Source of the DNA: Saccostrea echinata
Taxonomy: Eukaryota
Assembly: GCF_033153115.1 (NCBI RefSeq)
Contig: NW_026889772.1
Location: forward strand, 6,262,001 to 6,326,000
DNA length: 64,000 nt
Direction of reading: 5' to 3'
Below are positions 29,144 through 58,047 of this stretch, in pieces. Numbering within the stretch: position 1 is the first letter of the stretch; the number at the start of each line of letters is the position of its first letter. The notes under the pieces were generated by a model. That model was given only the letters and a program-made list of their open reading frames with translations. It searched no databases and was not told where the DNA came from. The translations under genes and the position numbers were made by a program.

Positions 29144-30333
29144 TTAGCTCTGATAAAGCCTAGCTTCACTATACATGTAATTGTTGTATATGTTGTAATT
29201 GTGGGTGATTCTTGTTGCTGATTGGCCAGCCTCACTGTAAGTGTCCGTGGTCTCAGTATTAAATCCTTCTTCCTCCTCGCTATCTTCCTGGGGGTCCGAG
29301 TTAGAAGAGGACCCCGTGTCACTATTCCCTGAAAAGTCAGAAGATTCAGAGTGCTCTCGTGCCCTGTCCATAGTCCTTAAACCCAAACATGAACTTAGCA
29401 TAGGCATGGACAGCAAACTCTGACGAACCCCTTCTCGAACTTTTTCACGAATTTCTTGGTCCATATTTTTGCGTATTTTTTCGTTTTCCCTCCTGAGCTT
29501 TTCCACTTCTTCCTTCAGGTAACTCATTTCTTCAGCTTTCTCATCAAGTTCACCGTTTTTAGCTTTGACTAATTTGGCACATAAGGCTTTGGCATCTTTG
29601 ATTTCTTTTTCCTTTTTGTCACAGTAATCTTTAACAATATCCTGGAAATGTCGGGTTTCACAGCCAGTAAAAGTGTCCCTACAGTCCTCAATTGTTTTCA
29701 TGAAGACGTTCATTCCTTCCACTAGTTTTTGGTGTCCTTTTGGATATTGCTGCTTGTGACATGTACCATAGAGAACAGCGTATCCCCTCTTAAACAGAAT
29801 TTCACTGATTGGGTGAAGTTGATTACAATTACTGTTCTTTATTTTGTTTTCTTCCTGCTCTTGCCTCGAGCGATAATATCGCACTTTCTTATTTAGTTTT
29901 TTAACAATAAAAATGTTTCGTGTCTCTAACAAGAGGGCATCTGTCATAACCTGAAGTGGCTGTTCTCGGTGTTGTAAGATCTGTATGAGCTTCTTGATCT
30001 TTTGTGAGGATGCCCCATGAATCTGAAAAAGAAGTTACCTCATCAATTTCAAAACTGGCATGCATAATTGACAATTTTACAAAAACCATGAGTAGAAAAT
30101 ATTTTTTTCAAAAAGTTTATTTTTAATTAATTCAATCAATTTAGCCTAAGTAGCAATAACTAATAATTTATGCCAAGGGAAAGATTTCAAATACTTACTG
30201 ACAAGTCATGTTTTTCAGTTTTGTTGATCTTATTATGTTGCAGTAAGTGCCTAAGAATGCGATCTGTTATAACCATGTGGCTCTGCAAATCATTCCTCAA
30301 GTTATGTAATGCCTGTTTCTCTGCAGAATCCAT
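29144..30333 (-). CDS. Cluster gene A: CARD-like + coiled-coil protein with acidic Ser-rich linker and C-terminal HNYNIYNN motif (~337 aa; exons 30199-30333, 29144-30022)
   Basis: Exon 1 is 45 codons (MDSAEKQALHNLRNDLQSHMVITDRILRHLLQHNKINKTEKHDLS) ending at a GTAAGT donor. The ttttcag acceptor continues in frame IHGASSQKIKKLIQILQHREQPLQVMTDALLL into the 267-aa ORF. Clear paralogue of gene B. Confidence 0.85.
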
Positions 30334-56577: not shown

Positions 56578-58047
56578 TCACCTAGGCACTTCATCTGAAT
56601 GAGAACTGTTCGCAAAGCTCACATCTGAGAGTTCTGAGCGTGGCCTAGTGAGTGCAGACCCTCTACCCTGACTCTCTAAGGTTGAACTTAGGCCACTGTT
56701 GGCACAGCTGATCAAAGAATGTTCACTATCATCTCTCCTTAGTTTGTGTAAAACTGATGGAGTGATAGGTCCAGATAATCGTCTCCTGTACATTTCACCC
56801 TTCTCTTTCAATACCTGTGTATAGTCTTCTATCAATAAATCTGATTCTTCTTCAGGTTCTGAAAGCTTTAATTTTAGGTGACGAATCTGATCCCTTAGCT
56901 CATCATTTTCAGTGTAACAAGTCTCTAGTTCAGATGTTAGTGTCTGGACTTTTTCTTCCAAGTCTTTGATTTTCTCCTCGGAATGATTCGATTCCTTTAT
57001 CATTGATTTATGCTTGCTTTTTAATTCTATATTTCGAACATTCATCATATCCGCTTCAGACTGGAGTTTCTTGTTTTTGTTTTCCAGCAGTTTATTTTTA
57101 TGATTAACCTTCTCTATGTCTTTGTGGTAACCCTGACACTTCTTTTCTAGGGCTTTGTTTCTTTGTTCTAACTCCTGTATTTTGTCTTTCAGACTTTGAT
57201 TGTCTGTGGTGAGCTCTGAATTCTTGTCCTCCAGTGATGATAAAGAAAATTCGTATTTATTAATCTTATCCTGAAGTCCAACCTGCTTCTCCGTGTGTAT
57301 TTTTATGGCATTTTGATGGCTTTGCCTTGTTTGCACAAATTTACTTTCCAACTCAATTATCATATCTTCCAATTCCTTATTTTTGTCAGCTACTTGCTTC
57401 TTCTCCACCTTAAGTTTCTCTACATCATTCTGGAATGTTCTAGACCTGTTTGTATGGAACTTCACCAGTTCTTTTTCACTTTTTAGATTAGATTCACATT
57501 TATGTAACATTTGCTTGATTTGAGAATTTTCTTGCAAGAGATGTCCAATGTCCTCAAGAAAACTAGATTTCTTACTTGACCTGTCAAGAACAGCTTCAAT
57601 ATCCTTAGTCAGGGTCTGTATGGCACTCAATGACCTTCGCGTCAAGTCTGTTGGACTTTCCATAAGACTTGGTCGTCCAAGTAGAAGTTCTGTAAGCTGA
57701 CTGTTCATTTGACACAGAATCTTTTTGGCTTCACTATGATTCCTTTCTATTTTCAGAACTTTTTTGGTTGAGCTTGTTTTTGGTTTTGTGCCCTTGGCTG
57801 GTTCTCCCTGATTTTTTGCCTGGTCAGAATGTTTTTTGGTTAAATCAAGGGAAGTTTTGGATTGTTCCAATGACTTTTTTGTGGAATTCTCAGAACTTTT
57901 TCCCTTCTCTGTAACTTTCCTGCTGGGTTCCGTTGGATTTTGATCGTGATCATTGTCATTCTTTGTTGCTTCTCCCTTGCTTGTAATCTCTTTGTCACTG
58001 GGACTTGTTTTGGAATTTTTCCCTTTCTTTGTCTGGTTCTGTGCCAT
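56578..58047 (-). CDS. Cluster gene I: 489-aa coiled-coil protein with two S[FC]ANS motifs
   Basis: 1.47-kb ORF with a K/S/T-rich head, QLTELLLG helix and ~230-aa coiled coil. Tail LISCANSGLS...SDVSFANSSHS. Confidence 0.82.
   Translation of the reverse strand: MAQNQTKKGKNSKTSPSDKEITSKGEATKNDNDHDQNPTEPSRKVTEKGKSSENSTKKSLEQSKTSLDLTKKHSDQAKNQGEPAKGTKPKTSSTKKVLKIERNHSEAKKILCQMNSQLTELLLGRPSLMESPTDLTRRSLSAIQTLTKDIEAVLDRSSKKSSFLEDIGHLLQENSQIKQMLHKCESNLKSEKELVKFHTNRSRTFQNDVEKLKVEKKQVADKNKELEDMIIELESKFVQTRQSHQNAIKIHTEKQVGLQDKINKYEFSLSSLEDKNSELTTDNQSLKDKIQELEQRNKALEKKCQGYHKDIEKVNHKNKLLENKNKKLQSEADMMNVRNIELKSKHKSMIKESNHSEEKIKDLEEKVQTLTSELETCYTENDELRDQIRHLKLKLSEPEEESDLLIEDYTQVLKEKGEMYRRRLSGPITPSVLHKLRRDDSEHSLISCANSGLSSTLESQGRGSALTRPRSELSDVSFANSSHSDEVPR

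What the first reader, a model, noticed from the sequence alone, without database searches (positions are those of the whole stretch)
29144..58047. Nested tandem cluster of nine uncharacterised CARD/coiled-coil/amyloid-motif genes: candidate new death-fold signalling system
Seen: nine intact 250-520-aa ORFs lie on the minus strand in tandem over 29 kb, antisense to and downstream of the last visible CCDC73-like exon. That exon ends at an open GT donor, so the cluster appears to be intronic. The genes form two ordered blocks: A-D are CARD-like + helical + coiled coil, with RHIM or NYNIYN tails in A-C; E-I are basic head + helical + coiled coil + S[FC]AN[SC] tail. Paralogues are very divergent but free of stops, which implies old duplication under selection. 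Known: CARD-coiled-coil proteins (CARD9/CARMA) nucleate filaments, RHIMs form signalling amyloids (RIPK1/RIPK3), and coiled-coil adaptors with short Ser motifs relay innate signals. Inference: this is a lineage-specific adaptor set for a supramolecular immune or cell-death complex. An alternative is a germline/sperm structural polymer, since nested genes and CCDC73 are often testis-biased. I do not recognise this family or arrangement.
Basis: partly seen in the sequence, partly recalled or inferred. Interest (0 to 1): 0.92.

Follow-up and report, generated by a model that had tools for sequence, protein, structure and literature searches.

The report
Oyster CARD–coiled-coil adaptor gene array
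This stretch of the rock oyster Saccostrea echinata genome is the start of a large tandem array of uncharacterised, oyster-specific genes for CARD plus coiled-coil proteins, some with RHIM-like tails, and for CARD-less coiled-coil proteins ending in a conserved serine motif; they are probably innate-immune or cell-death adaptors, but the claim that they sit inside a CCDC73 intron is not supported.

Summary
All nine minus-strand ORFs exist at the stated coordinates and are far beyond chance.

**Genes A-D.** Each has a 45-codon first exon, a phase-0 intron at the same place and one large second exon. Database proteins confirm the splice for A, B and C. The N-terminus is a true CARD: the AlphaFold model matches only solved CARDs (Z up to 13.7), and the family profile hits only BCL10 among solved CARDs (E 6.6e-4). 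A long coiled coil follows. Gene C carries a motif with exact RHIM spacing, unchanged in Ostrea edulis. No RHIM profile detects it.

**Genes E-I.** They have a disordered basic head, two short helices, a long coiled coil and a disordered tail with an invariant S[FC]AN[SCQ] motif (10 of 11 six-frame hits in 184 kb; 0.57 expected). No known family matches.

**Corrections.** The array continues at least 120 kb past the window: another SFANS gene, five more CARD–coiled-coil genes (three pass Pfam's CARD cut-off) and two more coiled-coil genes. Orthologues occur across oysters, with a Pinctada homologue. It is not a transposon. Nesting in a CCDC73-like gene is unsupported.

This is a new variant of a known kind. 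Other first-stage notes in this scan had already flagged the parts on this same stretch.

The parts
29144..30022 (-). Gene A, exon 2: second half of the CARD, helical region, coiled coil, acidic/Ser linker and Asn/Tyr-rich tail
   Evidence: ORF; acceptor; full-length protein P0018 = XP_061183119.1; the S. cucullata orthologue gets Pfam CARD E 0.0042
30199..30333 (-). Gene A, exon 1: 45 codons, CARD helices 1-3, GTAAGT donor
29168..29209 (-). Gene A C-terminal Asn/Tyr motif (ITHNYNIYNNYMYS)
   Evidence: paralogous motif in B
35110..35994 (-). Gene B, exon 2
   Evidence: NCBI model P0001 = XP_061183121.1; AlphaFold model
36115..36249 (-). Gene B, exon 1: 45 codons, GTATGT donor
   Evidence: the junction is present in P0001 and in spliced M. 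gigas forms P0005/P0008
35134..35175 (-). Gene B C-terminal Asn/Tyr motif (IVHNYNIYNNHMYS). It is unchanged in all the aligned orthologues of 81-89% identity (a cluster member of one is the M. gigas protein K1RQ52, of another an O. edulis protein) and variant in the C. virginica cluster
38328..39179 (-). Gene C, exon 2
   Evidence: the junction is present in P0057 and in O. edulis P0089
39323..39457 (-). Gene C, exon 1: 45 codons, GTAAAC donor
38436..38495 (-). Gene C RHIM-like motif, I-x-I-x5-F-Q-M-G. The spacing equals that of human RIPK3 V450-x-I452-x5-V458-Q-V460-G461
   Evidence: RIPK numbering from bioRxiv 10.64898/2026.02.19.706818; no Pfam RHIM hit
42574..43197 (-). Gene D, exon 2: second half of the CARD and coiled coil, no tail
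   Evidence: NCBI model P0057 joins D's 3' part to C. D's own joined model was not searched
43400..43534 (-). Gene D, exon 1: 45 codons, GTTTGT donor
44237..45811 (-). Gene E: 524 aa, single coding exon, SFANS at 44264-44278
   Evidence: this exact protein is in the NCBI set
48454..49335 (-). Gene F: 293 aa, SCANS at 48556-48570 and SFANC at 48487-48501
   Evidence: paralogue of H (E 1.5e-10)
49849..50922 (-). Gene G: 357 aa (a second ATG at 50880 is the likelier start), SFANS at 49867-49881
51533..52516 (-). Gene H: 327 aa, two SFANS motifs (51716-51730 and 51638-51652) and a CxxC-x11-CxxC tail (51557-51613)
56578..58047 (-). Gene I: 489 aa, SCANS at 56695-56709 and SFANS at 56605-56619
   Evidence: orthologues M. 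gigas XP_011428269.3 and C. virginica XP_022329449
58295..58304 (-). ISRE-like GAAATCGAAA, 257 bp upstream of gene I's ATG. Similar sites lie at 51141-51150 and 50971-50980 (G), 49718-49727 (F) and 36332-36341 (B)
   Evidence: post-hoc enrichment, binomial P about 2e-4
26968..27165 (+). Context, not part of the array: the last recognisable CCDC73-like exon
   Evidence: Pfam CCDC73 E 1.8e-4, 20 bits against a cut-off of 27; donor at 27148 and TAA at 27166

Best explanation
The window holds the first nine genes of a same-strand tandem array of at least 17 genes over about 150 kb. The gene families are conserved in true oysters.

**A-D** (and K-O beyond the window) encode small adaptors. Each has a BCL10-like CARD, then two short helices and a long coiled coil. 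In A, B, C and K this is followed by a disordered acidic/Ser linker and a short Asn-rich beta-prone motif. In C, that motif has RHIM geometry.

Proposed mechanism for A-D (inferred):
1. The coiled coil pre-oligomerises the protein.
2. This raises the local CARD concentration enough to seed CARD-CARD filaments with caspases, BCL10 or paracaspase, or other CARD proteins, as CARD9/CARMA proteins do.
3. The RHIM-like tail adds a second, amyloid-type homotypic contact.

**E-I** (and J) encode CARD-less proteins with a disordered basic head, two helices, a coiled coil of up to about 230 residues (modelled in I) and a disordered tail. The tail carries one or two invariant hydrophobic-S-[FC]-A-N-[SCQ] motifs inside serine clusters. 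They most likely act as phospho-regulated scaffolds or regulators. They probably arose in the same array by loss of the CARD.

Shown: gene structures, CARD fold, coiled coils, motif conservation, taxonomic range, single-locus status.

Inferred: oligomerisation, filament or amyloid seeding, a role in immunity or cell death, and any A-D/E-I partnership.
For: - **Real genes.** Chance is excluded. NCBI models exist for A, B, C/D, E, I and J.
- **Transcription, indirect.** Cluster members of 337-338 aa (P0008, P0030, P0032, P0035) lie on M. gigas-type Logan contigs of about 1.2 kb. The two read in full (P0005, P0008) join exon 1 to exon 2. An unspliced contig would carry in-frame stops, so these are transcripts.
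- **CARD.** The model of B has pLDDT about 90 over residues 1-100, with six helices. Foldseek's top hits are CARDs (Apaf-1: target-normalised TM 0.81, rmsd 2.2 A). VIA-align gives Z 13.7, rmsd 1.9 A over 98 residues to a caspase-9/Apaf-1 CARD disk, and 49 of the 50 listed entries are CARD structures, the other a designed protein. The family profile hits only BCL10 among solved CARDs (E 6.6e-4). Sub-threshold Pfam CARD hits occur in the Pinctada and S. cucullata relatives. M, N and O exons score 25.0-25.6 bits against the 23.9-bit cut-off, covering CARD positions 37-84; in M and O this exon follows a 45-codon first exon, the same split as in A-D.
- **Shared exon.** The 45-codon first exon is present in A-D, K, L, M and O.
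- **Conservation.** B is 76-88% identical in C. virginica, M. gigas and O. edulis. C is 73% identical, with its 22-residue RHIM-like stretch unchanged. I is about 60% identical, with both tail motifs invariant.
- **Motif specificity.** The S[FC]AN[SCQ] motif gives 11 six-frame hits in 184 kb, 10 of them in the tails of E-J; shuffles give 0.57.
- **Not repeats.** Only array members are found in the 923-Mb genome, and there are no fragments between the genes.
- **Context.** A bivalve iridovirus carries a CARD+RHIM gene similar to bivalve proteins (PMC12452177). ISRE-like sites are enriched upstream of the genes.
Against:
- Pfam's CARD cut-off is not reached by A-D or their orthologues.
- No RHIM profile or solved RHIM sequence matches any tail. 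C's core is FQMG, not (V/I)-Q-(V/I/L/C)-G. A and B lack Q-x-G.
- A-D and E-I show no detectable homology (hhalign probability 2.7%).
- E-I match only generic coiled coils.
- This genome has at least 147 CARD matches, so many CARD proteins may have diverged functions.
- The ISRE count is post hoc, and the transcription start sites are unknown.
Confidence: 0.55

Rival explanations
1. There are two or more functionally independent families. A-D and K-O are CARD adaptors. E-J are unrelated coiled-coil proteins, for example cytoskeletal, centrosomal or trafficking scaffolds, that merely share a duplication-prone locus. On this reading there is no joint 'system'.
For: There is no detectable homology between the blocks. 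E-J have no death-fold domain, and NCBI's E, I and J products are the single open frames read here. They match only generic coiled coils. Automatic names are cytoskeletal or coiled-coil types.
Against: E-J are embedded between CARD-coiled-coil genes on the same strand. They share the plan of two short helices, a long coiled coil in one large exon and a disordered motif-bearing tail. ISRE-like sites lie at similar distances upstream of G, I and J and of the CARD gene M.
Confidence: 0.3
2. The proteins are dominant-negative regulators or decoys. [quoted passage not shown]
For: No effector domain was found in any member. RHIM cores are degenerate in A, B and L. A viral CARD+RHIM homologue of bivalve proteins was interpreted as an inhibitor of cell death (PMC12452177).
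Against: CARD9 and BCL10 also lack enzymatic domains yet act as positive nucleators (established knowledge; PMC5978004). The strict conservation of C's motif is compatible with either role.
Confidence: 0.2
3. The genes encode germline or sperm structural polymers nested in a CCDC73-like host gene.
For: A CCDC73-like exon with a possible open donor lies 2 kb upstream of the array on the opposite strand. Coiled-coil proteins are common in sperm.
Against: An in-frame TAA follows six codons after the candidate donor. No plus-strand coding-like frame was seen in the next 157 kb, and the array is at least 150 kb long. CARD and RHIM-like modules are signalling modules, not structural ones.
Confidence: 0.07
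4. The ORFs derive from a transposon ORF1/gag-like coiled-coil protein, or are decaying pseudogene copies.
For: They are single large exons encoding a basic region plus a coiled coil. One member outside the window (K) has a weak Pfam hit to the L1 ORF1 dsRBD-like domain (E 0.0039, no stretch passing on its own).
Against: There are no copies elsewhere in the 923-Mb genome. There are no stops or frameshifts. Orthologues exist in four or five oyster genera with conserved motifs and a conserved intron. There are no fragments between the genes.
Confidence: 0.02

Closest known systems
CARD-coiled-coil (CARD-CC) family: CARD9, CARD10, CARD11, CARD14 and invertebrate CARD-CC (PMC5978004)
   Same: Both have an N-terminal CARD followed directly by a long coiled coil and no enzymatic domain. 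The expected logic is the same: the coiled coil oligomerises the protein and the CARD nucleates a filament. Molluscs are known to have the CARD-CC/BCL10/paracaspase module.
   Different: The oyster proteins are much smaller (252-339 aa). No sequence match to the CARD9 or CARMA1 CARD was found, and structural Z to them (9.7-10) is lower than to Apaf-1 or caspase-9 CARDs. They form a tandem array of many divergent paralogues. They carry RHIM-like or Asn/Tyr tails that CARD-CC proteins lack.
BCL10
   Same: BCL10 is the only solved CARD matched by the family profile: E 6.6e-4 over helices 3-6, BCL10 residues 42-95. Both are short adaptors with a Ser-rich C-terminal region.
   Different: BCL10 has no coiled coil and no RHIM-like motif. 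The match is near threshold and covers only the exon-2-encoded half of the CARD. Staal et al. cloned a separate oyster Bcl10 (PMC5978004), so these genes are probably additional paralogues rather than the oyster BCL10; that clone was not compared here.
RHIM adaptors (RIPK1, RIPK3, TRIF, ZBP1; Drosophila IMD/PGRP cryptic RHIMs) and bivalve or iridoviral CARD+RHIM proteins (PMC12452177)
   Same: Gene C has the RHIM spacing, hydrophobic-x-hydrophobic-x5-hydrophobic-Q-hydrophobic-G, followed by x-x-N, and it is perfectly conserved in O. edulis. K has L-x-I-x5-L-Q-L-S. A CARD+RHIM combination is reported for bivalve proteins and for the viral gene BiIV1_006R.
   Different: The core residues are F and M rather than V/I and V/I/L/C. 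There is no Pfam RHIM or solved-structure sequence match. There is no kinase or death domain. Homology to the bivalve or viral CARD+RHIM proteins could not be tested, and IMG/VR held no relative.
Coiled-coil signalling scaffolds with C-terminal phospho-motifs (NEMO/optineurin, TANK/NAP1/SINTBAD; pLxIS adaptors)
   Same: E-I share the layout of a disordered head, a long coiled coil and a short conserved Ser-containing tail motif. H also ends in a CxxC...CxxC knuckle, as NEMO and TANK end in zinc fingers (my own knowledge).
   Different: No sequence or profile similarity was found. By inspection, the motif hydrophobic-S-[FC]-A-N-[SCQ] fits neither pLxIS nor the DSGxxS degron. This is a resemblance of layout only.

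Membership tests
CARD (death-fold superfamily, Pfam PF00619) | Six-helix antiparallel bundle with CARD topology | tested here: met
   The AlphaFold model of B has six helices in residues 3-100 at pLDDT about 90. VIA-align Z is 13.7-9.2 to 50 entries, 49 of them CARD structures. Foldseek's target-normalised TM is 0.81 to the Apaf-1 CARD.
CARD (death-fold superfamily, Pfam PF00619) | Sequence match to the Pfam CARD model at the gathering cut-off (23.9 bits) | tested here: inconclusive
   A-D and B's orthologues give no hit, or hits below cut-off: 19.8 bits for Pinctada P0019 and 17.5 bits for S. cucullata P0056. Array members M, N and O score 25.0-25.6 bits, over the cut-off. The family profile hits the BCL10 CARD at E 6.6e-4.
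CARD-CC family (CARD9/10/11/14 type) | CARD immediately followed by a coiled coil | tested here: met
   In the model of B, the CARD is followed by helices 79-129, 141-162 and 171-249.
CARD-CC family (CARD9/10/11/14 type) | CARD sequence groups with CARD9/CARMA CARDs (orthology) | tested here: not met
   The profile search of solved-structure sequences finds BCL10 but no CARD9 or CARMA1 at E up to 10. phmmer against 1.84 billion representatives finds only 10 oyster or pearl-oyster relatives. No phylogeny was run.
CARD-CC family (CARD9/10/11/14 type) | Nucleates BCL10 filaments and recruits paracaspase | not testable with these tools
   This needs biochemistry.
RHIM (Pfam PF12721) | Core tetrad (V/I)-Q-(V/I/L/C)-G (bioRxiv 10.64898/2026.02.19.706818) | tested here: not met
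   C has F-Q-M-G and K has L-Q-L-S. A, B and L have no Q-x-G core.
RHIM (Pfam PF12721) | Spacing of the aliphatic tetrad: hydrophobic-x-hydrophobic-x5-hydrophobic-Q-hydrophobic | tested here: met
   C has I-N-I-HNHGH-F-Q-M, compared with hRIPK3 V450, I452, V458, V460. K also fits. A and B do not.
RHIM (Pfam PF12721) | Match to the RHIM profile or to solved RHIM sequences | tested here: not met
   There is no Pfam hit at E up to 10 for the tails of A, B or C. phmmer against solved-structure sequences finds nothing relevant.
RHIM (Pfam PF12721) | Forms amyloid and mediates homotypic recruitment | not testable with these tools
   This needs ThT, SDD-AGE or DAmFRET assays.
Transposon ORF1/gag-like proteins | Many dispersed copies in the genome, often decayed | tested here: not met
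   Six-frame searches of the 923-Mb genome with B and H find only array members. There are no fragments between the genes.
CCDC73 (Pfam PF15818), the proposed host gene | Match to the CCDC73 model, with the gene body spanning the array | tested here: inconclusive
   One exon scores 20 bits against a cut-off of 27, E 1.8e-4, covering positions 105-162 of 1050. The first exon gives no hit. The genome-wide scan was negative. No downstream plus-strand exons were found in 157 kb.

The most novel reading that the evidence does not exclude
Oysters carry a dedicated, possibly IRF/ISRE-inducible locus of hybrid adaptors that couple the two known types of signalling polymer, death-fold (CARD) filaments and RHIM-type amyloids, on one coiled-coil-oligomerised chain. 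CARD-less array members use the previously undescribed hydrophobic-S-[FC]-A-N-[SCQ] phospho-motif to switch the assembly on or off. Bivalve iridoviruses have captured a CARD+RHIM copy as a decoy.
Probability: 0.15. Interest if true: 0.8.

Novelty: new variant of a known kind. Interest (0 to 1): 0.52.

Why it matters
Bivalves lack adaptive immunity and suffer mass mortalities from OsHV-1, Vibrio and iridoviruses. How they trigger regulated cell death is poorly understood.

- **A rare architecture.** One small protein combines a CARD, a coiled coil and a RHIM-like motif. In vertebrates these modules sit on separate proteins. It would give a compact model for how filament and amyloid nucleation are combined.
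- **A testable partner for a viral gene.** It is a candidate relative of the CARD+RHIM gene reported in bivalve iridoviruses; that kinship was not tested here.
- **A clean new motif.** The conserved S[FC]AN[SCQ] motif is a candidate short linear motif with no known reader.
- **A practical correction.** Current annotation leaves these genes 'uncharacterized' or gives names (CCDC186, myosin heavy chain-like, ROCK2-like) that no Pfam scan here supports. One NCBI model fuses D with C.

Tried and rejected
**Searches that found nothing useful**
- Pfam on all nine ORFs and on full-length models gave only sub-threshold coiled-coil noise.
- ESM Atlas was not informative: no usable hit for B, and hits of 0.86 or lower for H, including a NEMO-type cluster at 0.84 that is treated as noise.
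- phmmer of B against 1.84 billion representatives gave 10 hits, all oyster or pearl-oyster relatives or fragments.
- hhalign of the A-D profile against the E-I profile showed no relationship.
- The E-I profile against solved-structure sequences hit only GCN4-type coiled coils.
- IMG/VR viral contigs scanned with the A-D alignment gave nothing.
- A Pfam CCDC73 scan of the whole genome was negative.
- Literature searches for K1RQ52, XP_011428269, CARD-CC + mollusc, and CARD + coiled-coil + oyster expansion found nothing relevant. The CgRHIM paper (Liu et al. 2024, Dev Comp Immunol 159:105226) is cited by another paper but is not in the library, so its domain architecture could not be checked.

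**Readings of the S[FC]AN[SCQ] motif rejected by inspection**
- The pLxIS, beta-TrCP DSGxxS, PP1 RVxF and N-glycosylation readings do not fit. These are my own knowledge, not tool tests.

- Complex prediction was not used. No pair had a principled prior, and coiled-coil pairs would give ambiguous passes.
- Spliced models were never joined by me. I used exon-by-exon references and natural database proteins (P0001, P0018, P0057, P0089). D's joined model was therefore never searched or folded.

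
Full report
**Where we are.** The window is Saccostrea echinata contig C23:6262001-6326000. 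It contains no N. RIOK3 exons lie on the minus strand at about 11.3-17.2 kb. A 33-bp satellite of 155 copies at 21067-26175 creates a spurious 1623-aa ORF.

**The observation.** Nine minus-strand ORFs of 209-524 aa lie exactly where stated. With 33% GC, a random frame stays open for 250 codons with probability about 4e-9, so about 5e-4 such frames are expected in the window.

Each of A-D has, 130-270 bp upstream of its large exon:
- a 45-codon ATG exon ending at a GT donor (GTAAGT, GTATGT, GTAAAC, GTTTGT);
- a polypyrimidine-AG acceptor that keeps phase 0.

Database proteins confirm the junction for A (P0018, XP_061183119.1), B (P0001, XP_061183121.1) and C (P0057; O. edulis P0089). NCBI's model XP_061183279.1 joins the 3' part of D to C. 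The standalone 328-aa O. edulis protein argues that C is a gene of its own.

D's joined model was therefore never searched.

**What A-D are.** The AlphaFold model of B, built on a 10-row alignment, has pLDDT about 90 over residues 1-100 with six helices. Helices 79-129, 141-162 and 171-249 follow, then a disordered tail.
- Foldseek's best hits are almost all CARDs. Apaf-1 gives target-normalised TM 0.81 and rmsd 2.2 A.
- VIA-align gives Z 13.7, rmsd 1.9 A over 98 residues to a caspase-9/Apaf-1 CARD disk. Of the 50 listed entries, 49 are CARD structures and one is a designed protein.
- At sequence level, a profile of the family hits only BCL10 among solved CARDs: E 6.6e-4, BCL10 residues 42-95.
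- Pfam CARD is sub-threshold in the Pinctada homologue (19.8 bits) and the S. cucullata orthologue of A (17.5 bits), against a cut-off of 23.9. UniRef already calls the Pinctada protein 'CARD domain-containing'.

**The tails.** C ends with a motif whose hydrophobic positions, Gln and Gly have exactly the spacing of human RIPK3 V450/I452/V458-Q-V460-G461, as given in bioRxiv 10.64898/2026.02.19.706818. The 22-residue stretch is identical in O. edulis, although the proteins are only 73% identical overall. However:
- the core is FQMG rather than (V/I)-Q-(V/I/L/C)-G;
- neither Pfam RHIM nor solved RHIM sequences match.

I therefore call it RHIM-like, not RHIM. A and B share a different Asn/Tyr-rich motif without a Q-x-G core. 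It is unchanged in all the aligned orthologues of 81-89% identity (M. gigas and O. edulis clusters) and variant in the C. virginica cluster. D has no tail.

**What E-I are.** The model of I shows a disordered residue 1-93 head, helices 94-122 and 132-154, one continuous helix 162-394, and a disordered tail. In the alignment of E-I with the four orthologues of I:
- only Gln117 and Gly124, in and just after the first helix, and the S-F-A-N tail motif (Ser477-Asn480) are invariant, apart from the start Met;
- a second copy of the motif (SCANS or SFANS) is shared by F, H and I.

The pattern S[FC]AN[SCQ] occurs 11 times in the six-frame translation of 184 kb. Ten of these are in the tails of E-J. 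Shuffles give 0.57.

Pfam, the ESM Atlas and a profile search of solved-structure sequences give only generic coiled-coil matches. hhalign finds no relationship to A-D. H has a CxxC-x11-CxxC ending.

**The array is much larger than the window.** I fetched 120 kb downstream. More same-strand genes appear there:

| Gene | Position from window start | Type |
|---|---|---|
| J | +72.6 kb | two S-F-A-N motifs; XP_061183280.1 |
| K | +84.0 kb | CARD-coiled coil |
| L | +95.8 kb | CARD-coiled coil |
| M | +101.5 kb | CARD-coiled coil |
| N | +110.7 kb | CARD-coiled coil |
| O | +121.9 kb | CARD-coiled coil |
| P | +128.7 kb | coiled coil with a Cys/His-rich C-terminal domain |
| Q | +176.6 kb | coiled coil with a Cys/His-rich C-terminal domain |

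- K, L, M and O have the same 45-codon first exon.
- M, N and O carry the second half of the CARD on a separate exon. Those exons pass Pfam's CARD cut-off (25.0-25.6 bits, CARD positions 37-84). In M and O this puts the intron at the same place in the CARD as in A-D.
- K's tail again fits the RHIM spacing, L-x-I-x5-L-Q-L-S.
- BLASTP links A-B-C-K-L, F-G-H-I-J, N-O and P-Q.

'Nine genes in two ordered blocks' is therefore a window-edge effect. The SFANS genes are embedded between CARD-coiled-coil genes.

**Not a repeat family; conserved in oysters.**
- Six-frame searches of the 923-Mb genome with B and H find only array members.
- There are no decayed fragments between the genes.
- phmmer of B against 1.84 billion representatives gives just 10 hits.
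- Orthologues are annotated in S. cucullata (adjacent LOC numbers for A and B), O. edulis, C. virginica and M. gigas, with a homologue in Pinctada imbricata. They are labelled 'uncharacterized' or carry automatic names that no Pfam scan here supports.
- Cluster members of 337-338 aa lie on about 45 Logan contigs of roughly 1.2 kb. The two read in full (P0005, P0008) join exon 1 to exon 2. The intron carries stops, so they can only come from spliced RNA. This is indirect evidence of transcription in M. gigas.

**Nesting in a CCDC73-like gene.**
- Plus-strand coiled-coil exons lie at about 20055-20165, 20946-21066 and 26968-27165.
- The last one matches Pfam CCDC73 at E 1.8e-4, below the cut-off, covering model positions 105-162 of 1050.
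- It has a GTGAGT donor at 27148 but also an in-frame TAA at 27166.
- No coding-like plus-strand frame follows in the remaining 37 kb of the window or in the next 120 kb.

Nesting would need an intron of more than 150 kb with undetected exons. I rate it unlikely but not excluded.

**Mechanism (inferred).** By analogy with CARD9/CARMA and BCL10 (PMC5978004), the coiled coil would oligomerise the adaptor so that its CARD can seed filaments with other CARD proteins. This genome has at least 147 CARD matches. The RHIM-like tail would add amyloid-type recruitment. E-J may be phospho-regulated scaffolds or regulators derived from the same array.

Two pieces of context fit an antiviral or cell-death role:
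- A bivalve iridovirus carries a CARD+RHIM gene similar to bivalve proteins (PMC12452177).
- ISRE-like GAAANNGAAA sites are about 7-fold enriched in the 600 bp upstream of 13 array genes: 7 sites against 14 in 196 background windows, binomial P about 2e-4. The test was post hoc, with six motifs tried. The sites lie at -218 to -270 in G, I, J and M.

An oyster 'CgRHIM-containing protein' has been studied (Liu et al. 2024, cited). I could not read that paper, so whether it belongs to this family is unknown.

**Limits.**
- There is no direct expression, induction or interaction evidence.

**Verdict.** The genes and their architecture are real and conserved, and the death-fold reading is correct. 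The RHIM reading is plausible for C (and K) only. The functional link between the two blocks is unproven. The nested arrangement is unsupported. This is a new variant of a known kind (CARD-coiled-coil adaptors), with an undescribed tail motif family alongside.

Noticed in passing
window 21067-26175: A 33-bp satellite of 155 copies at 93% match creates a spurious 1623-aa minus-strand ORF (20899-25770). It lies inside the presumed intron of the CCDC73-like gene.
   Followed up: yes
L001:8604-9908 (-), L002:11-886 and 1398-1532 (-), L004:1790-2653, 3588-3722, 7472-8401 and 9462-9596 (-), L005:6717-7694 (-), L006:7861-9018 (-): The array continues beyond the window. J is SFANS-type and annotated as XP_061183280.1. 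K, L, M, N and O are CARD-coiled-coil genes. M, N and O have a separate exon for the second half of the CARD that passes Pfam's CARD cut-off.
   Followed up: partly
L007:4720-5619 (-) and L012:2603-4117 (-): Two further coiled-coil genes (P, Q) share an 80-residue C-terminal Cys/His-rich domain (46% identity, E 4e-20). Its CxxC...C-x-H...W-x-CC...GC...H pattern recalls a CHORD domain, but only weak hits support this (RAR1 CHORD E 1.2; Pfam CHORD E 1.8-3). The start of the domain (C-L-x-C-x-K-x-F) resembles the CxxC tail of gene H.
   Followed up: partly
window 42574-43203 and 38328-39457: NCBI model XP_061183279.1 (482 aa) fuses the 3' part of gene D, through a small intervening exon, to the whole of gene C. 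The O. edulis orthologue is a standalone 328-aa C protein. The fusion is therefore either read-through transcription or a prediction artefact.
   Followed up: partly
window 36332-36341, 49718-49727, 50971-50980, 51141-51150, 58295-58304; L003:82-91; L004:9820-9829: ISRE-like GAAANNGAAA elements lie upstream of B, F, G, I, J and M. In G, I, J and M they sit at a similar distance (-218 to -270) from the ATG. They are about 7-fold enriched over intergenic background. The test was post hoc.
   Followed up: partly
whole genome G000: There are at least 147 six-frame matches to Pfam CARD, 131 of them over the cut-off. Many lie in open frames of about 337 aa on contigs C5, C6, C33 and C36, which suggests a separate large single-exon CARD gene family.
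   Followed up: no
window 11298-17168 (-): RIOK3-like exons lie on the minus strand (Pfam RIO1 E 1.9e-23 for 11867-12190), with a probable start near 17168. They run tail to head with the array, and their 5' end is about 3 kb from the 5' end of the CCDC73-like gene.
   Followed up: partly
window 1759-2742, 6047-6393, 27163-27592, 60686-61278: Other tandem repeats are present, with periods of 65/97, 74, 32 and 36 bp. The last one produces a 107-aa repeat 'ORF'.
   Followed up: no
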